Under the pieces are notes generated by a model. The model saw only the letters and a program-made list of their open reading frames with translations, made no database searches and was not told where the DNA came from. Shown one piece after another: positions 13,790 to 57,817 of a stretch of DNA of 64,000 nt (within the stretch, counting starts at the first letter, position 1; each line of letters begins with the position of its first letter). Source of the stretch: Octopus sinensis (Eukaryota); assembly GCF_006345805.1 (NCBI RefSeq), contig NC_043014.1:24738001-24802000 (forward strand), in the 5' to 3' direction. The position numbers and the translations under genes were made by a program.

Positions 13790-14780
13790 AAGTTGACCAT
13801 GAGAAAATCAACCAGTAGATTTCAAAGACTGACCTTGAATTTTATTAATAGATATTGCAAAGCAAAGTCGCACTGGGAATTGTGTTTGCTTGAACTCAAA
13901 TGGCATGTCTGTTGGTTTGATTGGAATTCTTGGAATGAAAACTTCTTCCCCAGAGGCACATCCAATGATGATGGTAGCTTCTGTCACATTAGGTGATAAT
14001 GTTTTTACAATCAACCTTGTCCCATTGCATAATTTAGGAAGGTCTAAATTTCTTAGAATCATTATTGGAACTCCTACCTACAAAAAAGTTTATGTGGAGG
14101 AATTCCAGATGGTTCAAGAGAATTAAGAAACTTGATTTTCATGAAGGACTGAATCAACTGATTTGTACTTCTTAGTGATTGTTGGAATCTTATTCATTAA
14201 TTCATGGTTAATTCTTGCTACTGTCTCATTTTTTGGAGTAAAAAATGCCCTGTCACACAACCATTTATGTGAATTATGATTATTACTTAAGTCCAGCAAT
14301 ACCCTGTTCTTCATTTCAGCTGGAAAATTCATCATAATAGCAATATGAGCCAAACTGATATCACCATTCCCATCAAATGATACTTTTGCATTCCCTAATT
14401 GGAGGAGCCAAGTTGAAAACTGTTTTGCACATTGGTCCCCATGTAATAAAGCGCGCACGTTAGTATTGAAGGAGAATTTCAGCACTTTATTCCATAGGTG
14501 TGAAGACTTAATGCATGGTAATGTCTGTCTGAAGTCTCCTAATAAAACTAATGTAACTCCTCCCATAAATTTATTGTTGCCTCTGATGTCCTGTAAGGTC
14601 TTACCAAGAGCTTCCATTGCACCTCATTGTGACATGGTGCATTCATCCCAAATAAGAAGGTGGCATTGGCACAACTCTTCTGCTGAACCTTAATCTTTAC
14701 TTATATTACAAATTAAACTGTCATTTGTGACCAGGTTTAGTGGTAATTTAAAAGGAGAATGAACTGTTCATCCTCCTGGG
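13790..14780 (-). pseudogene. Helitron PIF1-family helicase fragment
   Basis: LLGDFRQTLP, LCNGTRLIV, VFIPRIP, QFPVRLCFAISINKIQGQSL; frameshifted. Confidence 0.9.
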
Positions 14781-18716: not shown

Positions 18717-18839
18717 TATATATATATATAAAACTTAATTGGAAAAGGACGCATGGCATTCAGTCATATAATAATATAAATAATATATAAATATATGCAT
18801 ATATACATACATATATGTACACACCTACATACATATGTA

Positions 18840-19205
18840 TGGCTGTGTGGTAAGTAGCTTGCTAACCAACCACACGGTTGCGGGTTCAGTCCCACTGCGT
18901 GGCATCTTGGGCAAGTGTCTTCTGCTATAGCCCCGGGCCGACCAATGCCTTGTGAGTGGATTTGGTAGACGGAAACTGAAAGAAGCCTGTCGTATATATG
19001 TATATATATGTATATGTGTGTGTGTTTGTGTGTCTGTGTTTGTCCCCCTAGCATTGCTTGACAACCGATGCTGGTGTGTTTACGTCCCCGTCACTTAGCG
19101 GTTCGGCAAAAAGAGACCGATAGAATAAGTACTAAAAGGTGGTGGTACAGCATGGCCGCAGTCAAATGACTGAAACAAGTAAAAGAGTAAAAGAGTAAAG
19201 AGTAA
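18840..19205 (+). mobile_element. tRNA-derived SINE
   Basis: GGCTGTGTGGTAAG head, GGGTTCAGTCCC B-box, (AAAAGAGT)n tail. Confidence 0.85.
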
Positions 19206-19350
19206 AGAGCATATATGGGTACAAGACATCAAAAAAATGTTGAACACAATGAGAAACGAAAACATAAAAACAAAAACATAGAAATGAACTTGTTTTTTTG
19301 GAACCACAAAAAACAAACAGAGAAACGAGACATGCAACATAAAGAATATT

Positions 19351-19411
19351 CCCCTTCTTCAGTTGTCCCTATTTCATCTACTCTGCATTTTGAAGGCAAG
19401 GACAATACGCG
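19351..19411 (-). ncRNA. Non-circularly permuted hammerhead-like motif (family 1, decayed copy)
   Basis: CGC-GTA^-TTGTCC-TTG-CCTTC-aAAAt-GCA-linker-GGACAA-CTGAAGA-AGGGG; GAAAC hit by two CpG-type transitions. Confidence 0.55.
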
Positions 19412-19509
19412 ACTTTGTTGAAACAGTCCTTCCTGTAAAGTAGATTAAATAAAATTTGGGATTTTTTGCAGAGGGTGAAAGCGGAATATATATATAAGGT
19501 TCCTCACAG

Positions 19510-22500
19510 GCAAAGAACACAGGTACAAGGTTTTCTGGGCATTGACGAGGTAAGGGGCGTGGGTATACTTCTTGCGGAGAAATGGGTGGATAAGGTAATT
19601 GAGGTAGTCAGAGTATGCGACAGAATACTTAAGATTAGATTAGTGCTCCATCATGGGTTAGCAACCATTATCTCAGCCTATGCCTCTCAGCTGGGGCTAC
19701 CTGATGGACAGAAAGACCGATTCTATGACACCCTCTTGCAGACTACTGCATTGACGAATGACAGGGACCTTCTCATTGTGGCTGGTGACTTCAATGGACA
19801 TGTTGGACAACATACAGGGGGCTTCCACAGCATACATGGAGTCTACCGTTTTGGCTCTCGCAATGAGGAGGGAACCAGGCTGCTGGTGTTCTGTGATGCA
19901 AATGATCTTATGGTCTGCAATACTAACTTCAGAAAACCTGCCAGTCACCAAGTCACCTACCGCTATGGCAGACACACTAGTCAAATTGACTACATCCTCA
20001 CCAGAGAAAGGGAAAGATAGCTGCTTATAAATGCCAAAACCTTCTCAGATGAAGAATGTACCCCACAAGATAGACTTGTAGTTAGTGACTTCAGGATCAG
20101 GGCTAAGTGGATAACCGGAAGACGACCAGCATCGAGGAGAAGGGTCTGGAAGCTTAAAGATCCTGCAAATGGACAGAGGTTTAGAGACATATTACTCAAA
20201 GCCTTTGACGAAATAGAAGGGGATATTGCTTCACACGATGTAGAAGAGAACTGGAGGTTTCTATGGGACAACCTGCTAAGGGCCACGGACCAGATCTGTG
20301 GATGGTGCAAAGTCTCCTCTCAACTCAAAATACCATGGTGGTGGAACAATGTTGTTGACAGGGCTGTCAGAGAAAAGAAACAGGCATGGAAGGACTGGAA
20401 GAACGGTGGTAGCAGGGAATTGTATCAGACTGCCTGAAGGGAAGCTAGGAGGCAGGTTTATTTAGCCAGAGGGGAAGCAGATAAGAAAAATATTGCCAAT
20501 GTTCTGCGCCGTGAGGATCAAAGACTTGAGGTATTTCGTGTTGCAAGACAGTGTGTGAGAGAATCGTGATGTCGTAGGAGAGAAATGTGTTCGCATGGAT
20601 GCAAAGAGAGAGGTTTGGAGACGCCACTATGAAAGGATGCTGAATAAAGAAAATGAATGGGAGAAAGAAAGTCTGCCGAATGTCGACCCAACAGCGGGAC
20701 CAGCCATCCGAGTTGACAGTTCCTTGATAGATAAAGCAATTTAGAGTGTAACAAGGATGGTCTCTGGAACACTTGAGGGGTGCCGGTCATATCCTGTTAC
20801 ATTTAATTATTTGTCGAAAGAAAAAAACCAAACCTCGACTATCTCCAATAGTAATAAATAATATTTTTATTTTGTCTGGATTCTCAAATAATATATATAG
20901 ATATATCTTCTTCAGGGCAAACCGGTAGCCAAGGCCATGAAACTAGTCACATTAGTTAACTTGTGTAAGCCAAATGCTGTCTTGTCTTGCATAGAAAGGG
21001 CTTCTCTATGTGTTGGTTTTGCTTGAGAGAACCTTGAGTTGTGTCCATTCGATTCAGCTGCAGCTTCGAAAAGACAGATCCAGCGGGAAATCTTTCTGTT
21101 GGTAGTTCTCTGCGCATGCGTATGAAGGTATTTCCGGCGGCCTACCAGAAGTGATCCAGCTCTGTGCATGTGCGCTGAAGACTCCCATAATGGCGTCATT
21201 ACAAGAGTATAAAGACAGGGAAAGCCCCTTGGCCCATCAGGAATCACTGCTGAGACGCTCAAAATATCTGGCAGTGTCGGCTATAGCCTAGTCACCCGCA
21301 TAGTTAACCAGGTGATAAACGAAGGAGTCATACCCAATGACTGGTGTAGCAGCACTATAGTCAACTGCTACAAAGGTAAAGGTGACACTTTAGATACAAA
21401 TAATTACAGAGGTATCAAGTTGTTGGATCAGGTAATGAAGGTCACGGAGAGGGTCATAGCCCAACTAATTAGGGAGAGAGTCAGTTTGGGTTCGTGTCAG
21501 GGAATAGCACCACTGATGCTATATTTCTGGTAAGACAGCTGCAGGAGAAATATCTAGCCAAAGATAAACCTCTGCACCTGGATTTTGTTGACATGGAGAA
21601 AGCCTTTGACAGGGTCCCCTGATTCCTTATCTGGTGGTCAATGAGGAAACTAGGGATAGATGAATGGTTAGTGAGAGCTGTGCAAGCCATGTACAGGGAC
21701 GATGTCAGTAAGGTGAGGGTTGGCAACGAGTACACTGAAGAATTCCGGGTAGAGGTAGGGGTCCACCAAGGTTCAGACCTTAGCCCCCTCCTATTTATAT
21801 TAGTCCTCCAGGCAATAAGGGAGGAATTCAAAACAGGATGCCCCTGGAAACTCCTCTATGCTGATGACCTTGCTGTAATTGCTAAGTCACTATTAGAACT
21901 AGAGGAGAAGTTTCAGGTGTGGAAACAAGGATTAGAATCGAACGGCCTTAGAGTCAACCTAGCTAAAACCAAAGTCCTAATAAGTAGGAAGGCAGGCAAA
22001 CCACAAATCCATTCAGGTAGATGGCCCTGCTTGATCTGTGTAAGCTATGGACACATAAGAGGTGCAGCAATATCAAAGGAAGGCTAACTGGGAAAATAGT
22101 TTTTGTATTTGCCAGATGCTCAGGAGCAATAAACACTGAAAATGTGCAGAGAACAACTTCCACCACATTCCAGGGAGAAAAACTATAAGTAGTTGATAGC
22201 TTCTGTTATCTTGGTGACCAAGTCAGTAGCGGAGAAGGGTGTGCTGAAAGTGTAGCTGCAAGAAGAAGAATAGCGTGGGCAAAGTTCAGAGAGCTCTTAC
22301 CTCTGCTGGTGACAAAGGGCCTCTCACTCAGAGTAAAAGGTAGACTGTATGACGCATGTGTACGAACAGCCATGCTACATGGCAGTGAAACATGGGCTGT
22401 GACTGCTGAGGACATGTGTAAACTCGCAAGGAATGAAGCCAGTATGATCCAATGGATGTGTAATGTCAGTGTGCATACTCGACAGAGTGTAAGCACTAAG

Positions 22501-23837: not shown

Positions 23838-26094
23838 CATCATCATCATCGTTTAACGTCCGTTTTCCGCGCTAGCATGGGTTGGACAGTTCGACCGGGG
23901 TCTGGGAAGCCAGGAGCTGCACCAGGCTCCAGTCTGATCTGGCAGTGTTTCTACAGCTGGATGCCTTTCCTAACGCCAACCACTCCACAAGTGTAGTGGG
24001 TGCTTTTTACGTGCCAGGGAAGTCTGGCATCGGCCACGATTGGTTGGTGCTTTTAACGTGCCACTGGCACGGAAGCCAGTCAAGGCGGCGCTGGCATTGG
24101 CCAAATTCGGATGGTGCTTTTTATGTGCCACCGGCACAGAAGCCAGTCAAGGCGGTGCTGGCATCGGCCACGTTCAGATGATGCTTTTTATGTGCCACCG
24201 GCACAGGTATCACAACTACTATTTCCATCGATATTTATTTCGATGTTCATGTACTTGACTCAATAGGTCTCCTCAAGCACAGCGGGATGTTCTGGAATCC
24301 AAGGTACTTTGAATGGGCAGGGGCTATGCGGAACTGGTGCAGGAAGCAGCCTGGGTCTTTGCAGTCACAGCATATCTCCAGAGATCTCGGTCCTTCGCCA
24401 TTGCCTCTGTGAGGCCCAACACTCTGAGGTCATGCTTGACTACCTCATCCCATGTCTTCCTGGGTCTACCTCTCCCCCTGGTACCTTCAACTGTTTGGGA
24501 GCGGCACTTCTTCACACATCTCTCCTCATCCATCCGCAGTACATGACCATACCATTGCAAGCGTCGCTCTTGCACACCACATCTGATGCTTCTTATGTCC
24601 AGCATTTCTCTCAGGGTGCTTACCCTCTGTCGTGCGCGCACACTAATATTACACATCCAGCGGATCATGCTAGCTTCATTTCTTTCAAGTCTACGCATGT
24701 CCTCTGCAGTCACGGCCCATGTTTCACTACCGTGAAGCATGGCAGTTCGCACACATGCATCATATAATCTACCTTTCACTCTAAGCGAGAGACCCTTTGT
24801 CGCCTGTAGGGGTAGGAGCTTTCTAAACTTTGCCCAGGCTATTCGTATTCTAGTGGTGACACTCTCTGAGCATCCACCTCCACTACTAACTTGGTCACCC
24901 AGGTAGCGGAAACTATCAACTACTTCTAGTTTCTCCCCCTGGAGTGTGATGGAATCTGTTTTCTGAGTATGTGTGGTGTCTATTGTCCCTGTGCATCTGC
25001 CGCACATGAAAGCTATCTTATCAGTTAATTTCCCTTTGATGTTGCTGCACCTCTTATGCATCCATAGCTTACACTGGGTACATCTTATGAAGTTTCTACT
25101 TACACCTTTCCTACAGATCGAGCAGGGCCACCTGCCCGAGGGTGTGTGTGCTGAGTTCACCTTTCTGCTTGCTATAACTTTGGTCTTTGCTACATTTACT
25201 CTAAGGCCCTTTGCTTCTAACCCTTGCTTCCACACCCGAAATTTCTTTTCTAGTTCCGGTAGTGATTCTGCTATGAGAGCCAGGTCATCAGCATAGAGGA
25301 GCTCCCAGGGGCAACTTGTTTTGAATCCCTCTGTTATTGCCTGGAGGACTATGATGAATAAAAGGGGACTGAGGGCTGAGCCTTGGTGTACACCTACTTC
25401 TACCTGGAATTCTTCACTATATTCGTTGCCAATCCTAACCTTGCTGACAGCCTCTCTGTATAGGGCCTGTACAGCCCTTATTAGCCATTTGTCAATCTCC
25501 AGTCTCTGCATCGACCACCAGATAAGGGATCGCGGGACCCTGTCAAAGGCTTTCTCCAAGTCCACAAAAGCTATGTAGAGGGGTTTATCGTTAGCTAGGT
25601 ACTTCTCCTGCAGTTGTCAGACCAGGAATATAGCATCAGTGGTGCTTCTACCCGGCACAAAACTGAACTGCATCTCATCTAAGCAAATTCTCTCCCTAAT
25701 GAGATGGGTTATGACCCTCTCTGTGACCTTCATCACCTGATCCAACAGTTTAATACCCCTGTAGTTATTTCTATCTAGAGCATCACCCTTACCCTTGTAG
25801 CAGTTGACTATGGTGCTGCTACGCCAGTCATTGGGTATGACTCCATTATGAACTACCTGGTTTACAATGGTTTACATAGCCAGCTGTTTTAAGCATCTCA
25901 GCAGTGATTCCTGATGGGTCGGGGGCTTTACCTGGTTTCATACCCTTAATTGCCTTAACTACAAGGAAGCTGTCTATTCGGATAGCTGGTCCCTCTCCTG
26001 GGTCAACATTTGGCAGGCTCTCCTCTTCTCATTCATTCTCCACATTCAGCAGTCTTTCATAATGGCTTCTCCAAGCCTCTTTCTTTTCACCATC
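23838..26094 (-). mobile_element. 5'-truncated RTE LINE with a 413-aa RT frame
   Basis: ORF 24324-25565: DLEKAFDRVP, HQGSALSPLLF, LYADDL; (CAT)n tail. Confidence 0.95.
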
Positions 26095-34134: not shown

Positions 34135-35365
34135 AGGTTGCAGAGCAGAGGCCAAAAACCTATCTCTTTGACCTTGCACATCAGCAAGGTCATGGAACGA
34201 ATAGTCAGAAGAAAACTAATCACCTTCCTTGAAGAAAATGACTTGCTGACTGACACCCAACAAGGTTTCCGACCAGGAAGAAGCTGTCTAACTCAGCTTT
34301 TACAACACGATGACTGGGTGCTGAAACAGCTGCTCAACCACTCAAATGTGTACGCGGTATATCTCGACTTTGCAAAGGCCTTTGATAAAGTCAATCATGG
34401 AATGATATGTCACAAACTGCTTGATCTCCGCATAGTTGGAAAATTGGGAGACTGGCTTCATGATTTTCTGAAGGATGGCAGTCAGGTACACAAATAGTGA
34501 GCAGTGTTCCACAAGGCATAGATTTGGGACCACTATTGTTCATAATAGCCCCTTCAGATATGCCCTCAGCCACCCAAAGAGCCATGATCACAAGTTGTGC
34601 AGATGATACAAAAGTCTCACAGGTAATACAGAACCCTAAAGACACTATGCACCTGCAATGTGAGCTGGATGAAATATACAAGTGGGCTGAAAAGAATAGC
34701 ATGCAGTTTAATGCTGGAAAGTTTCAAGCCTTGTGCTATCAGCATGCAAAACTAAATGAAATACCCATTAAATACACTGGACCTGCAGGGATAGTAATCG
34801 ACCTGGGCATTTATATTGACTGTGATGATGCATCCTTCCATGTGCATGTTGTTCAATTGACAATGAAATGCTGAATGGATGGATTCAGAGATTAAGACTC
34901 TATTCCTGAGAGCACAAGCGCAAAAGATTTGCCATAATATACATCTGGAAGATCCTGGAGGGACTTGTCCCAAACTTTGGCATCGAGAGTTACACAAATA
35001 CTAGAACTGGATGCCACTGCATAGTGCCAAGAACTCGAAATTTGCCATCAAGATACTGCAGTAGCCTGGGCTTCACAGGACCACAGCTCTTCAATATCCT
35101 CCTGAAGGACCTGAGAGACCTGCATGGGGTGGATGTAGGTGTCTCCAAAATAAAGCCGGACCTATTACTATTAAGTGTTCCAGATGAGCCAACTTTGCAG
35201 CAGGAGGCGCAGATGAGGGCAGCTGCATCAAACTCCCTCATGCACCAAATGTCAATTCTTAAAAAGCATTCATGAAATAAAATTATGTAGCAACATCAAA
35301 TGGCAGTGCCCCAGCATGGCCACAGCTCATGAGCTGAAACTAGATGAAATCAAATCAAATATATA
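34135..35365 (+). pseudogene. CR1-like LINE RT 3' fragment
   Basis: QQGFRPGRSCLTQLL, YLDFAKAFDKV, VPQG..LGPLLF, ADDTK; CCCCAGCATGGCC 3' UTR. Confidence 0.9.
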
Positions 35366-35401
35366 TGTATGTATATGTGTATATATTTATGTATAGATGT
35401 A

Positions 35402-35447
<46 letters not shown>

Positions 35448-35653
35448 TTAATAAATAAAACATATGCATATATACATACATATATGTACGTACCTACCTC
35501 TACATGTATATATACACGCATATATGGGTACAGGACACCAAAAAAACGTCGAACACAATGAGAAACGAAAACATAAACACAAAACCAAGGAACTGGACAT
35601 TTTTTTTAAACAACGAAAAAATAGAGTACAGGACAAATAACACAAGGAAAATT

Positions 35654-35714
35654 CCCCTTCTTCAGTCGCCATGGTTTCATCTACTCTGCGTTTCGAAGGT
35701 GAAGGCGATACGCA
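35654..35714 (-). ncRNA. Non-circularly permuted hammerhead-like motif (family 1, intact core)
   Basis: TGC-GTA^-TCGCC-TTCA-CCTTC-GAAAC-GCA-16nt-GGCGA-CTGAAGA-AGGGG: stem III 5 bp, stem I 5 bp, stem II 4 bp including two G.U. Confidence 0.7.
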
Positions 35715-36316
35715 TCTTCGATAGAAATTTTCATTCCTGCGAAAAGCAAATTAAATAAAATTTGAGATCTTTTTGCAGAGGGGTAAAAATGGTAACAAAA
35801 ACAGGACAGTAACGAGAGTACAAAATATAAACAGTAAAAGACAGGACAAGGAGCATAACAAGACAAGAAGGGCTGTTAAGCCGAATGAGGAAAAGTATTA
35901 CGAACGCTCTTTTTGAGAACGGCGAAGGAGCAACAGAAAATGCCGTCCACACTTCAAGGAAGTCAGGCCAGAAAGACAGTAGCAGAGCTCTCGTCGCGGG
36001 TCAACGACGGGAGGGAGGAGGAGGAGCAAGAAAAAGGGAGAGAAAAAAAGGGAATGGTTGTGAGGAAACCAGAAAGAATGAAGAATGAGAGAGAGGGAGA
36101 GACAGTAAGGTAGAAGAAAAGGAAACCAGAAAGAATGAAGGCTGAGAAAAGGAGGGGACAGAAAGGTTAAGAGTGCGCATCATTATTAATATCAAGAACA
36201 ATCTTACTTAGAAATGGATGCATGCGTTCCGTCATATAATGAATGAATTAATAAATAAATATATGTATGTATATATATATATTATGTGTGTGTGTATATA
36301 TATATACACGTGTATG

Positions 36317-36350
<34 letters not shown>

Positions 36351-36384
36351 GTGTGTGTGTGTATATATATATGTGTGTGTGTAT

Positions 36385-36961
36385 ATCATCATCATCATCA
36401 TCATCGTTTAACGTCCGTTTTCCGCGCTAGCACGGGTTGGACAGTTTCGACCGGGGTCTGGGGAGCCAGGGGCTGCCCCAGGCTCCAGTCTGGTCTGGCA
36501 GTGTTTCTACAGCTGGATGCCCTTCCTAACGCCAACCACTCCGCGAGTGTAGTGGGTGCTTTTTACGTGCCACCTGCACAGGTGCCAGAGGGGTCTGGCA
36601 TCGGCCATGGTCGGTTGGTGCTTTTTATGTGCCACCTGCACAGAAGCCAGTCGGGGCGGTGTTGGCATTGGCCACGTTCGGATGGTGCTTTTTATGTGGG
36701 GGGGGAGTGCAGAAATATAGGGGAGCACCAGTGGGGAGGGGTGTTCGGAGTGTTCATGTACTTGACTCAACAGGTCTCCTCAAGCACAGCGGGACGATCT
36801 GGGATCCGGGGTACTTTGAATGGGCAGGGGCTATGCGGAACTGATGCAGGAAGCAGCCCGGGTCTTTGCAGTCACAGCATGTCTCCAGAGATCTCGGTCC
36901 TTTGCCATTGCCTCGGTGAGGCCCAACGCTCTGAGGTCAAGCTTGACTGCCTCATCCCATG
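36385..36961 (-). mobile_element. RTE 3' end fragment
   Basis: (CAT)n-CGTTTAACGTCCG tail plus ORF C-terminal codons similar to 23838-24450. Confidence 0.85.
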
Positions 36962-36962
36962 T

Positions 36963-39104
36963 CTAGCAGTGGTACCCGGCATTGCATGGGTCTTAATAAA
37001 TTTCCATTCAGCTGTGGAAAGACGAGGGTTTACACTTGAGAAAATTTTTTGATCCCTATCTCAGGTACTATGTTCGCACAATGCTCTTCTGATTTCAACG
37101 ACTTACTCCTCAGCCCAGCACAGATTAGAACCATACACTTGCAAATGGAGCCATAGAATGAAGCACACAGATAAACATATAGGAAGAGAATTAGTTGAAC
37201 AATTTCAGCGTTTCCTAAGAGGGAACTGTTTGAGAGATAGATTGCTCCCAGTTGGAGGAGGTTAATGGTCAACAGTTGGAATGTTGACCTCAAGAGGTTC
37301 ATGCAACATATAGCCGCCATGCATTTTGTAAATTGGTATCCTTTCCGTTGAATTGGTCACTTTAATGTTATGAATAAACATACTTGAGGTAATCAACCAT
37401 ATAGAAGGCAGCAGAAATGTCCTCAAATATGTGATATCTAACCTGCCTTTCCGCTGGTCTGTTTGTAGCAGCTGTTTGACAACTTTGTTTCTTTGCATTA
37501 TTATTGTCAAATACAACGAATCGCCACCTCTTTGCCATTGTAGGAGCACCACATGAATGCCTTCCATAAACCCACAGAGTGTCAAGAGACAGGCGCCCTT
37601 TTCTGATGCTTCTGTCTGATACAGGGAAAAATAGTAAAAGTATTTGAGCATACCCTGTTATATGCATGCATGCATGGCAATAACGTACCCACTTCAGCCT
37701 TGGCAAATACATAGCATTTCGTTCTAGACAATGTTTCTTCTCTTCCACCGGCATGTTAATGTGAACAGTCTGTCTCTACTGCTGACTCTGGAGCATGCAA
37801 CGTACAACTGGCTGTGGGAAAAGCAAGGCTCTTCCAAGAGAAGTCTGGCTATAGAAAGAGTCTGGCCCTGGGACTTGTTGACAGACATGGCGAAGCTGGG
37901 CTGGAGCAGGAATTGCAGTCTTCTGAAGGCAAAAGGTATATCTGCTCCTGAGGGAGTAAGAGGAATCCTGGGAATGAATACATCCTCACCTTTTCCGCAT
38001 CTGGATAGGATGGTTGCCTCAGAACATACCTAATGAATGTATGAAATTTCAATCAAATCAGTCTGGTGGTTCAGCGGTTTGGCCCAGCTTCACTCGAAAG
38101 CACTTGTACATGGAAACCATGAACAACGCAAAAATGTAACTTTTTGAAAGGCAGCTTGGGTATTGATTTGATTCAAGAGGTTATTAAGGTTATTGCTTTA
38201 ACAATGTTATGCCCCAAATCGTCTTTTCTCAAGTGTAAGGTCCCAGGTTTCCGCAGTTTCGTGGTAATTTATTAAGACCTGTGCAGCACCAGTTACTACT
38301 GCTTGCGAAATGCATGAAGGAAGTATTAAGTACTTAACAGTAGCTTGTGCAGTGCAGAGGCTGTTATTGCTTTAACTACCTTATGCTACACATAGAAATC
38401 GCTTTCATTTATTGCAATGGAAATCCTCAGTGCCGGATGTTTACTGTTCTTGGTAGTGGCTATTTTGAGGTCACGTGGAGTCACTGTATGTGTGCACACC
38501 ATGGTGGAGATGAATTTTTATGCGTCATAGAAGGAATGGGGTCAATGTTCTAAGAAAAACAAATCAGGAGATACCTTAACAAAGGCATATTGTTCAAATG
38601 TGAGTTTGTTGAATTGTGCTCAAGCAAAGCGCAATTTAATGAAATGAACCATTACATAAGACTCGTTGGGTGAAAATGCATTTGTTTACTGAGTTTGGTT
38701 TAAATCGACTCAATGGTTCCAGCGCTATGGCCTGCCTTAAAGGCATTTTTGGAGTTGGTTTTTCCCATACTGTACTCAAACGAAACAGGATTTGAAAAAA
38801 ATAATAACAAAACAAAAAACCTTGGGTAAGAATGCATAGGTATGTCAAGTTTGATCAAAATTGGATGACTTTTTGAAGAAAAAATTGATAATTATCGATC
38901 AAGTTTTTGCAAAAACCAAACATTGATGGAAGCAGTTGTTATGACTAAAACATACCTCAGAACATACCAAATGCATGTCTGAAATTTCAATCGAATTGGT
39001 TGGGTGGAACTCAAGTTATAAACCTTTGAACTTGCATACACACACACACACCACACACCACACACACACACACACAGAGGCAGTTTCTATTTTATATATA
39101 TAGA
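36963..39104 (-). mobile_element. 2.1-kb non-autonomous Helitron carrying a helicase C-terminal fragment
   Basis: 5' A^TCTATATATATAAAA at 39104; 3' CCCATGCAATGCCGGG-TACCACTG-CTAG at 36963; 37760-38005 translates GEDVFIPRIP...FAMSVNKSQGQTL...SHSQLYVACSRV. Confidence 0.8.
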
Positions 39105-46390: not shown

Positions 46391-49300
46391 CATCATCATT
46401 ATCATTTAACGTCCGCTTTCCATGCTAGCATGGGTTGGATAATTTGACTGAGGACTGGCAAACCAGATGGCTGCACCAGGCTCCAATCTGATCTGGCAGA
46501 GTTTCTACAGTTGAATGCCCTCCCTCATGCCAACCATGAGGGCCAGTCAGGCAGTACTGGCAATGGCCACACTCAAATGGTGTTTTTTACGTGCTACCTG
46601 CACAGGATCCAGTCAAACGGTACTGGCAACAAACCTTGCTCGAATGTTTTTTATGTGCCAGTAAGGCGATGCTGGTAATGATCGCGCTCAAATGGTGCTT
46701 TTTATGTGCCATCGGCACAGAAGTCAGTAAGTTGCTCTGGCAACGATCACGTTCAGATGGTGCTCTTAGCACTCCTCTAGCATGGATGCCAGTTAACGAA
46801 TTTGACTTCGATTTTGATTTCACTTGCCTCAACAGGTCTTTGCAATCAGAGTTTAGTGTCCAATGAAGGAAAGGTATGCATACACAGGATGGTTATATCC
46901 CTGGCATAAGCTACGAGCTATGGTCTCACTTGGCTTGCCGGGTCTTCTCAAGCACAGCATATTTCCAAAGGTCTCGGTCACTTGTCATTTCCTCTGTGAG
47001 GCCTAATGTTTGTAGGTCGTGCTTCACCAACTCATCCCAGGTCTTCCTGGGTCTACCTCTTCCACAGGAGCTGTTCTCATCCATTCTCGCCACATGACCA
47101 TACCAGCGCAATCGTCTCTCTTGCACACCACATCTGATGTTTTTTAGGTCCAACTTTTCTCTCAAGGTACTTATACTCTGTCGAGTATGCACGCTGACAT
47201 TACACATGCATCGGAGCATACTGGCTTCATTCCTTGCGAGCTTATGCATGTCCTCAACAGTTACGGCCCATGTTTCACTGCCATGTAGCATGCTGTTTGT
47301 GCACATGCATCATACAGTCTACCTTTTACTCTGAGCGAGAGACCCTTTGTCACCAGCAGAGGTAAGAGCTCTCTGAACTTTGCCTAGGCTATTCTTATTC
47401 TAGCAGCTACACTTTCAGCACACCCTCCCTTGCTACTGATTTGGTCAGGTCACCTAGTTAACGGAAGCTATCAACTACTTCTAGTTTTTCTCCCTAGAAT
47501 GTGGTGGAAGTTGTTCTCTGCACATTTTCAGCGTTTATTGCTCCTGAGCATCTTCCACATACAAGAACTATCTTCCCAGTTAACCTTCCTTTGATATTGC
47601 CGCACCTCTTATGTGTCCATAGCTTACACTGGGTACATATTATAGAGTTTCTACTTACACCTTTTCTACAGATCAAGCAGGGCCATCTACCTGAAGGGAT
47701 TTGTGGTTTGCCTGCCTCCTTACTTATTAGGACTTTGGTTTTAGCTAGGTTGACTCTAAGGCCCTTTGATTCTAATCCTTGTATCCACACCTGAAACTTC
47801 TCCTCTAGTTCTGATAGTGACTCAGCAATTAGAGCAAGGTCGTTAGCATAGAGGAGCTCCCAGGGGCATCCTGTCTTGAATTCCTCTGTTATTGCCTGGA
47901 GGACTATGATAAATAGGAGGGGGCTAAGGTCTGAACCTTGGTGGACCCCTACCTCTACCCAGAATTCTTCACTGTACTTGTTGCCAACCCTCACCTTACT
48001 GACATCGTCCCTGTACATGGCTTGCACCGTTCTCACAAACCATTCATCTATCCCTAATTTCCTCATTGACCACCAGATAAGGCATCAAGTGGACCCTGTC
48101 AAAGGTTTTCTCCATCTCAACAAAAGCCAGGTATAGAGGTTTATCTTTGGCTAGATATTTCTCCTGCAGCTGTCTTACCAGAAATATAGCATCAGTGGTG
48201 CTATTCCCTGGCACGAACCCAAACTGCATCTCATCTAAACTGACTCTCTCCCTAATTCGTTGGGCTATGACCCTCTCCATGACCTTCATTACCTGATCCA
48301 ACAACTTGATACCTCTGTAATTATTTGTATCTAAAGTGTCACCTTTACCTTTGTAGCAGTTGACTATAGTGCTGCTACACCAGTCATTGGGTATGACTCC
48401 TTTATCTATCACCTGGTTAATTATGCAGGTGACTAGGCTATAGCCAACACTGCCAGATATTTTGAGCATCTCTGCAGTGTTTCCTGATGCACTTGGGGAC
48501 ATCCTTGTCTTCATACTCTTAATTGCTTTATCTACCAGGGTACTGTCAACTTGGATAGCTGGTCCCTCTGTTGGGTCGACATTCGGCAGACTCTGTTTCT
48601 CCCTTTCATTTTCTTTATTGAGTAACCTTTCATAGTGGCATCTCTAAACCTCTTTCTTTGCAACCTCATTTAGAGCAAGTGAACCATCATCCATGCAGAC
48701 AGATTTCTCTCCTACAACATCATGATTCTCTCTCACACACTGTCTTACAACAAGAATTACCTCAAGTCTTTGGTCCTCATGGTGCAGAACATTGACAAAT
48801 TTTTTCTCATCTGCTTCCCCTCTAGCTAAATAAACCTGCCTCCTAGCTTCCCTTCTGGCAGTCTGATACAATTCCCTGCTACCACTGTTCTTGCAGTCAT
48901 TCCAAGCCTGTTTCTTCTCTCTTATAGCTCTGTCAACAACATTGTTCTACCACCATGTTATTTTGGGTCGAGAGGGGACTTTGCACCATCCACAGATCTG
49001 GTCTGTGGCCCTCAGCAGGTTGTCCTGTAGAAACCACCAGTTGTCTTCTACATCATGTGAATCTGTATCTCCTATTTCGTCAAAGGCTCTGAATAATATG
49101 TTTCTAAATCTCTGTCCATTTGCAGAATCTTTAAGCTTCCAGACCCTTCTCCTTCATGCTGGTCATCTTCTGGGCATCCACTTAGCCCTGATCCTGAAGT
49201 CAGGGCTATGTTGTGGAGTACATTCTTCGCCTGGGAAGGTTTTGGCATTTATAAGCAGCCGTCTTTCCCTTTTTCTGGCGAGGATGTAGTGAATTTGGCT

Positions 49301-50170: not shown

Positions 50171-51099
50171 GGCGGGAGAGTGGGTGTAATGCAAACTAGC
50201 AAATTTAGACAAGAGCATCTTCTGGATACATATTCCCTCGGAGGATGTAAAAAAATAAAAGAAATTGAGTAGGGGAATCCGAGTGCATGCGCTTGTTTAT
50301 ATAGGGTGGTGGTGGTGGAGGAAGTCTTGGCGAAAAGAGTGGTAATCGAAAGAGAAACAGACAGTGAGGCGGAGATAGAGAAGGAGTAGTGGTCAGAACA
50401 CGAGGGAGAAAAATATTCTTTTGGGATTTGTGTAGCGTAATTTAACGAGATAGTAAATGTTGAGATAATAGTAAAATAGAATCGAAAAATCTGAGAGTTT
50501 TTGGTCAGCCAATCTATGACAAAATTAGAGAAATAAGTGACTGTGTGATAAACTTGAATAAATGAATATGTTGCGGTTAAGGATATGTGTAAACTAAGGT
50601 TATCTTAAGACAACAACGGGGAAGATGAAACTATTTGAAACTATATTTACATGTTGACATGGTAATGAAATAGAATAATTAAAAGAATAAGGGGTTTATA
50701 ATCTGTGCAGAAATAGAAGAGTAGATGAAAAGACAAAACTTCTTATCTGAGCATCTTCTGAGATTCATATTCTTTGGCAGAGGTATTAAAATCAAGTAGG
50801 GAAGTCTGAGTGTGTGCACTAGTTTATATAGGGTGGTGGTGGTGGAGGAGGTCTTGGTGAAGTGAGTGGTAATCGACTCTTCTATTTCTGTGCAGATCAT
50901 AAACCCCTTATTAGTTCTTTTCATTATTCTGTCTATTTCATTTCCATGTCATCATGTAAATTTAGTTTCAATAGTTTCATCTTCCTTGTTGTTACCAGAG
51001 GTAATGCAGTACGATAGTGTCAAGCAACTCCATTTAATTGAACAATGCAATCATTACATGAATTTAAATGCAGAGCAATCCTCTGCTATATAAAGACAT

Positions 51100-56358: not shown

Positions 56359-57817
56359 TATTAATAAAAGGAATTCCAACCTTGTCTGATTTTCACGTTT
56401 TAGTTACAATCTTATAATGATATATTATAAGATAATATAATATAATAGAATAAAATAAAATTGTAGAATGTTAAATGTTCATTCTGATTGAACTAGTACT
56501 TTCATGCATTAAATTCTGCGTGGTAATTAAATATAATGGTAATTAAAAAAGACACCACCATCACCACAGATATATACTATAAACACACAGACACACATCA
56601 ATACCTAAATTTTAAGTCGTGCCATTCACCACATACAAAACGCAACATCCCATACTGCCTAGCCAGAAGAATTTGTACCATTATAGAAGATGCAAATATC
56701 AGGAACAAACGCCTAACAGAACTAAGAAAATTTTTGCTCAAACAAAAATACCCATCTCTACTTATAGAAAATGGCATAGAGCGGGTTATAAAAATACCCA
56801 TACGACAACTTAGGACAACCAAAGGAAGAGGAAAACAAGAACAAGTCATACCATTCATAGTGACACACAACCCATGTCACCAGAATATCTTCAACATTGC
56901 CAAAGCAAACCTACCAATCATTGTCCAAAGTAATGAATTAAAAGATATAATCATGGATCGAGCTATGGTTCTTAGTAAATTACTTAAAAATTACTAACAA
57001 AGGCAAAATTTGACCTTAGCAACAAAGACCAAACATTCACTGTATCTAAATGCAATGATAGCCGATGTGGCACATGCCAATTCATACATACCGGCCAATA
57101 TATAAATACAAAAACCGGGAAAGTATTCACAAACGCGAATATGAACTGCAATAGCAGAAATTTAATTTACTGCATCAAATGCCCAAATTGTGAAGAAATA
57201 TATGTAGGTCACACGGGAAATGCACTATCAGAATGCTCACGTGTACACCGACAACAGATTAGAGACCCAGAGGTCCGTCAGATACCTTTGAGTAACCACC
57301 TAGCAACATGTGGTCGGAAAATCATCATCATATATATAATATTTCCATTCTACAAATTACACAGCCCAAGTGAAATCGAGAGGAAAATCAGAGAAAATAA
57401 TTTTATTGATAAATTCAAACCCAAGCTAAATAAGCAATAATAATAATACCTAGATAGCAGGAAAATTATCTTAACCAACCAATCAGCTTAAGTAATTGAG
57501 TGATACTACACACTGATTGGTCAGAATACAGTTTGCAAAACCTAGCAATCTGGAGCCTATCCAGCTGTATTTAAGGCACAGATTCAATCATCTCGCTACA
57601 GTCAAAAATTGTGAAGCATGACTGTCACCACTACTACATGAACCTGAATTTGCAGAATTTAATACATGAAAGTACTAGTTCAATCAGAATGAGCATTTAA
57701 CATTCTACTATTTTATTTTATTTTATTCTATTATATTATATTATCTTATAATATATCATTATAAGATTGTAAATAAAATGTGAAAATCAGACAAGGTTGG
57801 AATTCCTTTTATTAATA
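56359..57817 (+). mobile_element. 5'-truncated Penelope-like element with inverted pseudo-LTR
   Basis: RT thumb TDIYYKHTDTHQYLNFKSCH and GIY-YIG endonuclease NLIYCIKCPNCEEIYVGHT...REN.FI.KFKPKLN; 56359-56519 is the reverse complement of 57652-57817. Confidence 0.92.
57639..57682 (+). ncRNA. Degenerate type I hammerhead in the PLE pLTR
   Basis: TGAAC-CTGAAtt-TGCA...TACAT-GAAA-GTAC-TA^-GTTCA: 5-bp stem I and palindromic stem III intact, G8A9 replaced by TT. Confidence 0.55.

What the first reader, a model, noticed from the sequence alone, without database searches (positions are those of the whole stretch)
35654..35714. Non-circularly permuted (pseudoknotted) hammerhead ribozyme with a complete core
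Seen on the minus strand: UGC-G-U-A^ UCGCC uuca CCUUC GAAA-C-GCA [16 nt] GGCGA CUGAAGA a GGGG. All core nucleotides are present. Stem III (5 bp), stem I (5 bp) and stem II (4 bp including two G.U, after a bulged A) can form, but the strand order fits none of the circular types I/II/III. Established: in the hammerhead fold the distal ends of stems I and II lie side by side and stem III points away. This matches the 4-nt I-to-II linker and the long III-to-I linker seen here. Inference: a natural rearranged hammerhead in a PLE-type repeat end. To my recollection such permutations have rarely been described; whether this family is known must be checked. Caveat: GAAGG/CCUUC can pair in an alternative, inactive register.
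Basis: partly seen in the sequence, partly recalled or inferred. Interest (0 to 1): 0.92.

Follow-up and report, generated by a model that had tools for sequence, protein, structure and literature searches.

The report
Permuted hammerhead look-alike in octopus repeat
The sequence does contain every piece of a hammerhead self-cutting RNA in a scrambled order, an order already published in 2023, but it sits in an old, decayed genome repeat, its active fold is disfavoured, and it is most likely a non-working look-alike.

Summary
The motif is present exactly as described, on the minus strand at 35714..35654. Its block order is site, GAAA, CUGANGA. This is the "type SGC" non-circular hammerhead permutation of Eckert et al. 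2023 (PMC10085705), known so far only from metatranscriptomes.

My scanner for all six block orders finds only this hit in the window. Shuffles give 0.0027 hits per window, so it is unlikely here, but about 100 would be expected in a genome of 2-3 Gb.

The motif lies in a ~275-nt interspersed repeat of an octopod-like genome, with a second copy at 19209-19475 (79% identical). It is not in a demonstrable Penelope-like element.

- **For:** stem I shows two double compensatory changes between the copies, and an extra base after A9 matches published SGC ribozymes.
- **Against:**
  - One of those changes is explained by CpG decay.
  - Copy B has G12A and a stem I that absorbs the I-to-II linker.
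  - The motif is no better conserved than the rest of the repeat.
  - Active stem II (-2.2 kcal/mol) loses to an inactive register (-6.1).
  - No further copies could be retrieved.

Verdict: probably a non-catalytic look-alike, with about a 15% chance of a real ribozyme.

The parts
35654..35714 (-). Copy A of the hammerhead-like motif in S-G-C block order, 61 nt, with a complete core.
   Evidence: Read directly. It is the only hit of the six-permutation scanner in the window.
35704..35714 (-). Block S. Stem III 5' strand is UGCG (35714-35711). U16.1 is at 35710 and A17 at 35709. The predicted cut lies between 35709 and 35708. Stem I 5' strand is UCGCC (35708-35704).
   Evidence: pair table.
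35700..35703 (-). 4-nt linker (UUCA) from the distal end of stem I to the distal end of stem II.
   Evidence: Published SGC ribozymes typically have about 3 nt here. In copy B this segment (CUUG) can pair and extend stem I.
35687..35699 (-). Block G. Stem II 3' strand is CCUUC (35699-35695). GAAA is at 35694-35691. Stem III 3' strand is CGCA (35690-35687).
   Evidence: C35695-G35694 is a CpG. In copy B it reads CA, which gives G12A.
35671..35686 (-). 16-nt linker (GAGUAGAUGAAACCAU) between stem III and stem I.
   Evidence: It has no significant complementarity to the sequence downstream of stem II.
35654..35670 (-). Block C. Stem I 3' strand is GGCGA (35670-35666). CUGAAGA is at 35665-35659. 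The extra A is at 35658. Stem II 5' strand is GGGG (35657-35654).
   Evidence: GAAGG (35661-35657) can pair with CCUUC in an inactive register at -6.1 kcal/mol, against -2.2 for the active stem II.
35518..35782 (-). Copy A of the ~275-nt interspersed repeat that carries the motif. It is flanked on the low-coordinate side by a (TA/TG)n microsatellite. Its orientation is uncertain.
   Evidence: BLAST and alignment to copy B.
19209..19475 (-). Copy B of the same repeat, 79% identical over the BLAST match.
19351..19411 (-). Copy B of the motif: CGCGUA-UUGUC-cuug-CCUUC-AAAA-UGCA-[16]-GACAA-CUGAAGA-a-GGGG. Stem I is kept through two double changes. G12 is replaced by A. The outermost pair of stem III is lost.
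   Evidence: The minimum-free-energy fold is a 9-bp extended stem I hairpin.

Best explanation
This is a hammerhead look-alike. An old, non-autonomous interspersed repeat of about 275 nt in an octopod-type genome carries, on its minus strand, all hammerhead core boxes and three short complementary segments in the order site / GAAA / CUGANGA (type SGC).

I consider it non-catalytic, or at best marginally active.
- **Shown:** the register of stem II needed for catalysis is much weaker than a competing pairing that buries G8 and A9.
- **Shown:** the extra helix that holds stems I and II together in every published SGC ribozyme is missing.
- **Shown:** the second copy has lost the general base G12 and has turned stem I into a longer plain hairpin.
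- **Shown:** the only part with any comparative support is the stem I hairpin.
- **Inferred:** the hairpin may be a structural feature of the element's RNA. The core boxes are a coincidence of the kind expected about a hundred times in a genome of this size.
For: - **Thermodynamics.**
  - Active stem II GGGG/CUUC is -2.2 kcal/mol. The inactive GAAGG/CCUUC register is -6.1.
  - With the same helices wired as an ordinary type III hammerhead, the catalytic fold lies 5.9 kcal/mol above the minimum-free-energy fold, with ensemble probability 2.5e-5.
  - The minimum-free-energy folds of the native sequence use the inactive register in copy A and a plain hairpin in copy B.
  - Folding z-scores are not significant, from +0.8 to -0.7.
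  - The best duplex within 12 nt is -1.1 kcal/mol. Longer-range duplexes are reached by 36-51% of shuffles.
  - Disrupting that helix abolished cleavage of SGC-3.
- **Copy B.** GAAA reads AAAA (G12A). The I-to-II linker is absorbed into a 9-bp stem I.
- **Conservation.** 13 of 61 motif positions differ between the copies (21%), the same as the repeat as a whole at 79% identity.
- **Chance rate.** 0.0027 hits per 64 kb means about 40 per Gb.
- **Databases.** No Rfam match at E<=10. Eckert et al. searched all of RefSeq and reported no SGC ribozyme in any genome of a known organism.
- **Retained upstream sequence.** Both copies keep about 70 nt of homologous sequence upstream of the predicted cut. 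The copied template was therefore not a cleaved 3' product.
Against: - The motif is a 0.3% event for a single window.
- It was evidently present in the common ancestor of both copies.
- Stem I keeps 5/5 pairs in copy B through two double changes. It is the only one of 55 possible 5-bp helices in copy A that shows any compensatory change.
- 27 of 28 pair cells are standard pairs.
- The extra nucleotide between A9 and stem II is shared with almost all published HRIMA-1 SGC ribozymes: U there, A here.
- The G12A and C15.2U changes in copy B are CpG decays. They could have happened after insertion of a once-active element.
- Tertiary contacts can rescue thermodynamically weak hammerheads.
Confidence: 0.62

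Rival explanations
1. A genuine type-SGC hammerhead ribozyme belonged to the active ancestor of this repeat family.
- Transcripts of the element folded into the double-pseudoknot hammerhead and cut themselves 3' of A17. The precedent is the SINE-like Sm-alpha element of Schistosoma and the Penelope-like elements.
- Copy A still has the full core and may be weakly active.
- Copy B is a dead copy that lost G12 by CpG deamination.
For: - The core and the three stems are complete in the S-G-C order, with a 4-nt I-to-II linker like the published class.
- The motif is a 0.0027-per-window event.
- Stem I has two double compensatory changes.
- The extra base after A9 matches HRIMA-1.
- Copy B's core damage is at CpG sites.
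- Craig et al. 2021 report hammerhead "core" and "half-core" signatures that fit no canonical descriptor in Naiad Penelope-like elements. Naiads prefer (TA)n targets and survive as old remnants in cephalopods.
Against: - One of the two compensatory changes is CpG->TpG paired with CpG->CpA. Decay alone gives this outcome half of the time. The same C->U is equally "compensated" by G12A in an alternative UCG/CGA pairing.
- Stem II is 4 bp with tandem G.U and loses by about 4-6 kcal/mol to inactive pairings.
- There is no excess conservation.
- Copy B's changes favour a plain hairpin that is incompatible with the SGC linker.
- A poly(A) signal conserved in both copies lies on the opposite strand, 23-40 nt from the repeat end. 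This suggests the element may be transcribed antisense to the motif.
- No PLE ORF is attached.
Confidence: 0.15
2. The selected feature is only a stem-loop of the element's RNA: stem I closing a loop of about 25-33 nt, for example a recognition element for the partner reverse transcriptase. The hammerhead boxes around it are accidental.
For: - Stem I is the only helix with compensatory change.
- In copy B, two G-C pairs became A-U. At the same time, six of the eight adjacent positions changed and add four pairs, giving a 9-bp stem.
- RNAalifold also keeps nested pairs inside the loop.
- Recognition of 3' stem-loops by the reverse transcriptase of stringent-type LINEs is established knowledge (eel UnaL2/UnaSINE1).
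Against: - There are only two sequences.
- Folding z-scores are insignificant.
- The hairpin lies about 150-190 nt from either end of the repeat, not at a terminus.
- The orientation of the element is unknown.
- CpG decay inflates apparent covariation.
Confidence: 0.2

Closest known systems
Type-SGC hammerhead ribozymes (HRIMA-1 motif and SGC variants; Eckert et al., NAR 2023, PMC10085705)
   Same: - The same 5'-to-3' block order: site, GAAA, CUGANGA.
- All core nucleotides are present.
- A short linker of 3-4 nt runs from stem I to stem II.
- Stems I and III are 5 bp.
- One extra nucleotide lies between CUGANGA and stem II.
   Different: - The published ones have a 5-bp G+C-rich stem II. They also have a 4-12-bp helix joining the other sides of stems I and II, which is required for cleavage.
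- HRIMA-1 has an invariant AUGUU/AACAU stem I.
- They occur in metatranscriptomes, next to hairpin ribozymes of presumed circular RNA replicons. None was found in a genome of a known organism.
- Here stem II is 4 bp with two G.U pairs, the joining helix is absent, and the host is a dispersed DNA repeat of an animal.
Hammerheads of Penelope-like elements (Cervera & de la Pena 2014; Lunse et al. 2017)
   Same: A hammerhead core inside a repeated retroelement-like sequence of an invertebrate, next to microsatellites.
   Different: - Those are minimal type I motifs in pseudo-LTRs of elements encoding RT plus a GIY-YIG endonuclease. They act as dimers (my own knowledge).
- Here the topology is not type I, Rfam models give no hit, and no PLE ORF adjoins the repeat.
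Naiad PLE 'HHR_core / HHR_half_core' signatures (Craig et al. 2021, PMC8557442)
   Same: - CUGANGA and GAAA are present but fit no canonical descriptor, with the GAAA half sometimes on either side at a distance.
- (TA)n target preference.
- Old remnants in cephalopods.
   Different: No sequence of those elements was available to compare. No Naiad ORF is present next to either copy. This is a lead only.
Sm-alpha SINE-like element of Schistosoma with an active hammerhead (Ferbeyre et al. 1998; from my own knowledge)
   Same: A short, non-autonomous dispersed repeat of a few hundred nt that carries a hammerhead motif.
   Different: The Sm-alpha ribozyme is an ordinary type I hammerhead with demonstrated cleavage.
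CChMVd (+) hammerhead with an extra A10 between A9 and G10.1 (listed in the kinetics table of PMC10085705; De la Pena & Flores 2001 from my own knowledge)
   Same: An extra A at exactly the position of A35658, tolerated by an active ribozyme.
   Different: A type III viroid hammerhead with strong stems.

Membership tests
Hammerhead ribozyme (any topology) | CUGANGA box directly between stems I and II | tested here: met
   CUGAAGA is at 35665-35659 in copy A and 19362-19356 in copy B. One extra A precedes stem II.
Hammerhead ribozyme (any topology) | GAAA box between stems II and III, with A15.1 pairing U16.1 | tested here: met
   Met in copy A (35694-35691). Not met in copy B, where it reads AAAA, which is G12A.
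Hammerhead ribozyme (any topology) | Cleavage triplet N-U-H followed by stem I | tested here: met
   GUA^U in both copies.
Hammerhead ribozyme (any topology) | Three helices flanking the core, supported by covariation | tested here: inconclusive
   All three can pair, with 27 of 28 cells standard. Only stem I varies on both sides, and there are only two sequences. The shuffle control is uninformative (119/500). One change is CpG-driven.
Hammerhead ribozyme (any topology) | The catalytic fold is energetically accessible | tested here: not met
   The active stem II is -2.2 kcal/mol and the inactive register -6.1. The hammerhead fold lies 5.9 kcal/mol above the minimum-free-energy fold in a re-wired test construct. 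This is secondary-structure energy only. Tertiary contacts are not modelled.
Hammerhead ribozyme (any topology) | Site-specific Mg2+-dependent self-cleavage giving 2',3'-cyclic phosphate and 5'-OH | not testable with these tools
   This needs in vitro transcription and cleavage mapping.
Type-SGC hammerhead (Eckert et al. 2023) | Block order S-G-C, so that stems I, II and III all cross | tested here: met
   The scanner labels the hit SGC.
Type-SGC hammerhead (Eckert et al. 2023) | Short linker, typically 3 nt, between stem I 5' strand and stem II 3' strand | tested here: met
   The linker is 4 nt (UUCA) in copy A. In copy B the linker can pair and lengthen stem I to 9 bp.
Type-SGC hammerhead (Eckert et al. 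2023) | Helix joining the other sides of stems I and II, directly 5' of stem I 3' strand and about 1 nt 3' of stem II 5' strand. It is required for cleavage of SGC-3. | tested here: not met
   The best local duplex is 4 bp at -1.1 kcal/mol in copy A, and it is not conserved in copy B. Longer-range duplexes are reached by 36-51% of shuffles.
Type-SGC hammerhead (Eckert et al. 2023) | HRIMA-1 signature: invariant stem I AUGUU/AACAU | tested here: not met
   Stem I is UCGCC/GGCGA. At most this would be an "SGC variant".
Type-SGC hammerhead (Eckert et al. 2023) | Context: RNA replicon-like contigs in metatranscriptomes, often with a hairpin ribozyme on the other strand | tested here: not met
   The context is a dispersed DNA repeat among LINEs and microsatellites. 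The closest named LINE RT is from Octopus bimaculoides at 77% identity. No Rfam ribozyme is present in the window.
Penelope-like-element hammerhead | Type I minimal hammerhead in the pseudo-LTR of an element encoding RT and a GIY-YIG endonuclease | tested here: not met
   The topology is not type I, and Rfam hammerhead models give no hit. The flanks hold LINE RT fragments and microsatellites, with no PLE ORF. The only PLE-like ORF (56536-56997, plus strand) is 21 kb away and shares no DNA with the repeat.

The most novel reading that the evidence does not exclude
The ~275-nt repeat family descends from an element that carried a working type-SGC hammerhead. That would be the first non-circularly permuted ribozyme encoded in the genome of a known organism, an animal, and carried by a mobile element. 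It could also explain the non-canonical hammerhead "core" signatures reported in cephalopod and other invertebrate retroelements.
Probability: 0.15. Interest if true: 0.75.

Novelty: not a real feature. Interest (0 to 1): 0.3.

Why it matters
If the motif were active, it would move non-circular ribozyme permutations from anonymous metatranscriptome RNAs into an animal genome and a transposable element. It would also show that pseudoknotted hammerheads escape all standard descriptors and Rfam models.

As it stands, it is a useful caution. The hammerhead core carries so little information that complete-looking permuted motifs arise by chance at about 40 per Gb. In methylated genomes, CpG decay can also mimic compensatory change.

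Tried and rejected
1. **More copies of the repeat.** The aim was to test covariation. Every route came back empty:
   - nhmmer and mismatch searches in the window found only the two copies. A 14/15 match at 50716 is part of an unrelated foldback element.
   - Two protein-proxy searches used spurious ORFs that cover the repeat. Neither found a candidate.
   - Two JGI metagenome scans gave either nothing or three chance 20-mers with no flanking similarity.
   - GTDB genomes and IMG/VR gave nothing.
   - The LINE RT search shows that the collections barely hold octopod DNA: the best hit is 69% identical, and Octopus bimaculoides is 77% over part of the protein. Fetching genome neighbourhoods through proteins was therefore not possible.
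2. **Rfam.** There is no hammerhead hit, even at E<=10 on 281-401-nt slices. This is expected for a pseudoknotted permutation.
3. **Repeat as 3' UTR of a neighbouring LINE.** Rejected. Other copies of both LINE families in the window lack it.
4. **A longer element in copy A (to 36250).** Rejected. Both ends of similarity coincide in the two copies.
5. **A joining helix between the 16-nt linker and downstream sequence.** Rejected as not better than shuffles.
6. **Supplementary consensus sequences of Naiad elements.** They are not held.

Full report
**Observation**

The minus strand 35714..35654 reads UGCG-U-A^UCGCC-uuca-CCUUC-GAAA-CGCA-GAGUAGAUGAAACCAU-GGCGA-CUGAAGA-a-GGGG. All hammerhead core positions are present:
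- C3-A9 is CUGAAGA.
- G12-A15.1 is GAAA.
- U16.1 and A17 are present.

The three stems can form:
- Stem III is 5 bp with the A15.1-U16.1 pair.
- Stem I is 5 bp.
- Stem II is 4 bp (G-C, G.U, G.U, G-C), after one extra A.

The order of the three strands makes all three helices cross, so types I, II and III are excluded.

**Chance**

I wrote a scanner for all six possible block orders at the candidate's own stringency.
- It finds this hit and nothing else in the window.
- 1500 dinucleotide shuffles in 2-kb blocks give 4 hits in all, 0.0027 per window. One of them has the SGC order.
- With looser thresholds the window has 1 hit against 0.055 expected.

The motif is therefore unlikely in one window. 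The rate corresponds to about 40 chance hits per Gb. Octopus genomes are 2-3 Gb (my own knowledge), so a genome scan should meet such motifs by chance. The thresholds were also chosen after the fact.

**What is known**

The arrangement is not undescribed. Eckert, Friedrich, Weinberg and Weinberg (NAR 2023, PMC10085705) divided the hammerhead into blocks S (site), G (GAAA) and C (CUGANGA). They found and validated natural type-SGC ribozymes: 583 sequences, cleavage at the predicted site, and disrupt/restore mutants of all helices. They also found a few type-CSG ribozymes and one type-GCS candidate.

The present motif is exactly S-G-C. It shares two features with that class:
- the short linker from stem I to stem II, typically 3 nt there and 4 nt here;
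- an extra nucleotide between CUGANGA and stem II, which is U in nearly all HRIMA-1 sequences and A here.

It differs in three ways:
- The published ribozymes have a 5-bp G+C-rich stem II.
- They have a further helix joining the other sides of stems I and II, without which SGC-3 does not cleave.
- They come from metatranscriptomes. The authors state that no such RNA was found in a genome of a known organism although all of RefSeq was searched.

**Context**

The window is eukaryotic. It is full of (TA)n and (CA)n microsatellites and LINE fragments. The closest named relative of one LINE RT is from Octopus bimaculoides, at 77% identity.

The motif lies in a discrete repeat of about 275 nt. Copy A is 35518-35782 and copy B is 19209-19475. 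They have the same orientation and are 79% identical over the BLAST match. Both ends of similarity coincide in the two copies.

The neighbours are:
- For copy A: a microsatellite, the 3' end of a plus-strand LINE (34138-35345), and on the other side unique sequence up to the microsatellite tail of another, minus-strand LINE (36250-37000).
- For copy B: an abundant octopus repeat and a 5'-truncated LINE.

Neither copy adjoins a Penelope-like ORF. The one ORF that looks PLE-like to me (56536-56997, plus strand; from memory, with no Pfam hit) is 21 kb away and shares no DNA with the repeat. "PLE-type repeat end" is therefore unsupported.

The orientation of the element is open. A conserved AATAAA lies on the plus strand (35754-59), 23-40 nt from the repeat's end. 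This would put the motif antisense to a polyadenylated transcript.

**Comparison of the two copies**

Copy B reads CGCGUA-UUGUC-cuug-CCUUC-AAAA-UGCA-GAGUAGAUGAAAUAGG-GACAA-CUGAAGA-a-GGGG.

- *Stem I.*
  - It keeps all five pairs through two double changes, C-G to U-A twice.
  - Of 55 possible 5-bp Watson-Crick helices in copy A, it is the only one with any compensatory change.
- *Caveats on stem I.*
  - One of the two pairs is a CpG facing a CpG. Decay to TpG on one side and CpA on the other gives a "compensatory" result half of the time.
  - RNAalifold shows the same C->U equally "compensated" by the G12->A change in an alternative UCG/CGA pairing.
  - Only one non-CpG double transition remains.
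- *Stems II and III.* Stem II does not vary. Stem III has one wobble change and one broken pair.
- *Conservation.* Thirteen of 61 positions differ (21%), which is no better conserved than the repeat as a whole.
- *Copy B as a ribozyme.*
  - It has G12A, which removes the general base (established hammerhead biochemistry).
  - Six of the eight positions next to stem I differ. In copy B these add four pairs, so stem I becomes 9 bp and absorbs the I-to-II linker.
  - That is good for a hairpin and incompatible with the SGC fold.
- *Control.* With two sequences, the shuffle control of the pair count is uninformative (119/500).

**Energetics**

- The active stem II is worth -2.2 kcal/mol as a duplex. 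The register GAAGG/CCUUC, which buries G8 and A9, is worth -6.1.
- The GGGG run can also form a local hairpin with UUCCUU downstream.
- The native minimum-free-energy fold of copy A uses the inactive register. Folding z-scores are not significant.
- I wired the same helices as an ordinary type III hammerhead, to avoid the pseudoknot problem. The catalytic fold then lies 5.9 kcal/mol above the minimum and has probability 2.5e-5.
- No helix comparable to the published joining helix exists. The best is 4 bp at -1.1 kcal/mol, not conserved. Longer-range duplexes are matched by 36-51% of shuffles.

**Search for further copies**

Every route available failed:
- the window itself;
- two protein-proxy searches;
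- two metagenome scans;
- GTDB genomes;
- IMG/VR.

The collections hold almost no octopod DNA. The decisive test, family-wide covariation, could not be run.

**Verdict**

I put about 0.6 on a non-catalytic look-alike in an old interspersed repeat. About 0.2 of the remaining probability goes to the view that the stem I hairpin alone is a selected RNA structure. I put about 0.15 on a genuine, now largely decayed, type-SGC hammerhead of the element's ancestor.

A lead in favour of the last view is the report of non-canonical hammerhead "core" and "half-core" signatures in Naiad Penelope-like elements. Naiads prefer (TA)n targets and survive as remnants in cephalopods. I could not obtain those sequences.

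If the ribozyme reading proved true, it would be the first non-circularly permuted ribozyme in the genome of a known organism.

Noticed in passing
window 35754-35759 (+), and the homologous site in copy B near 19447: An AATAAA lies on the plus strand, inside a 15-nt block identical in both repeat copies. It is 23-40 nt before the end of similarity. The repeat may therefore be a polyadenylated retroposon read on the plus strand, antisense to the hammerhead-like motif.
   Followed up: partly
window 50612-50993: A foldback, MITE-like element. It has three nested inverted-repeat arm pairs of 24-41 nt, 90-93% complementary, around a core of about 145 nt. It was found because it holds a 14/15 match to part of the repeat, and it is otherwise unrelated.
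   Followed up: partly
window 56536-56997 (+): A 153-aa ORF with a motif (…YYKHTDTHQYLNFKSCHSPH…IPFIVTHNP…) that I recall as typical of the C-terminal part of Penelope-like-element reverse transcriptases. It has no Pfam hit, and it is truncated by a minus-strand LINE at 57787. No canonical hammerhead was detected by Rfam in the window.
   Followed up: partly
window 24324-25565 (-), 47494-48514 (-), 21312-22087 (+), 36870-37000 (-): Several copies of a LINE whose RT is followed by a PHD finger (Pfam RVT_1 plus PHD). Its 3' UTR carries 62-67-nt tandem repeats (36552-36698 and about 23880-24260) and ends in a (TA/CA)n microsatellite.
   Followed up: partly
window 14123-14617 (-): A PIF1-like helicase fragment (Pfam PF05970, E=3e-11), probably a Helitron remnant.
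   Followed up: no
whole window: CTGANGA occurs 49 times against 21.8 expected from shuffles (0 of 100 shuffles reach 49). Most are CTGAAGA. The likely cause is repeated coding and TE sequence, but this was not examined.
   Followed up: no
window 35377-35525 and 36259-36374: Sub-threshold Rfam matches to mir-297, mir-466 and mir-3149 (about 25-45 bits against gathering scores of 85-100). They fall on (TA/TG)n microsatellites and are low-complexity artefacts.
   Followed up: no
window 19140-19208 (-): Directly 3' of copy B on the minus strand there is a (TCTTTAC)n run followed by TTTCAGTCATTTGACTGCGGCCATGCTG…, the start of another dispersed repeat. Related tandem and SINE-like sequence recurs at 18760-19140. 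For this reason the simple repeat cannot be taken as a tail of the motif-bearing element.
   Followed up: no
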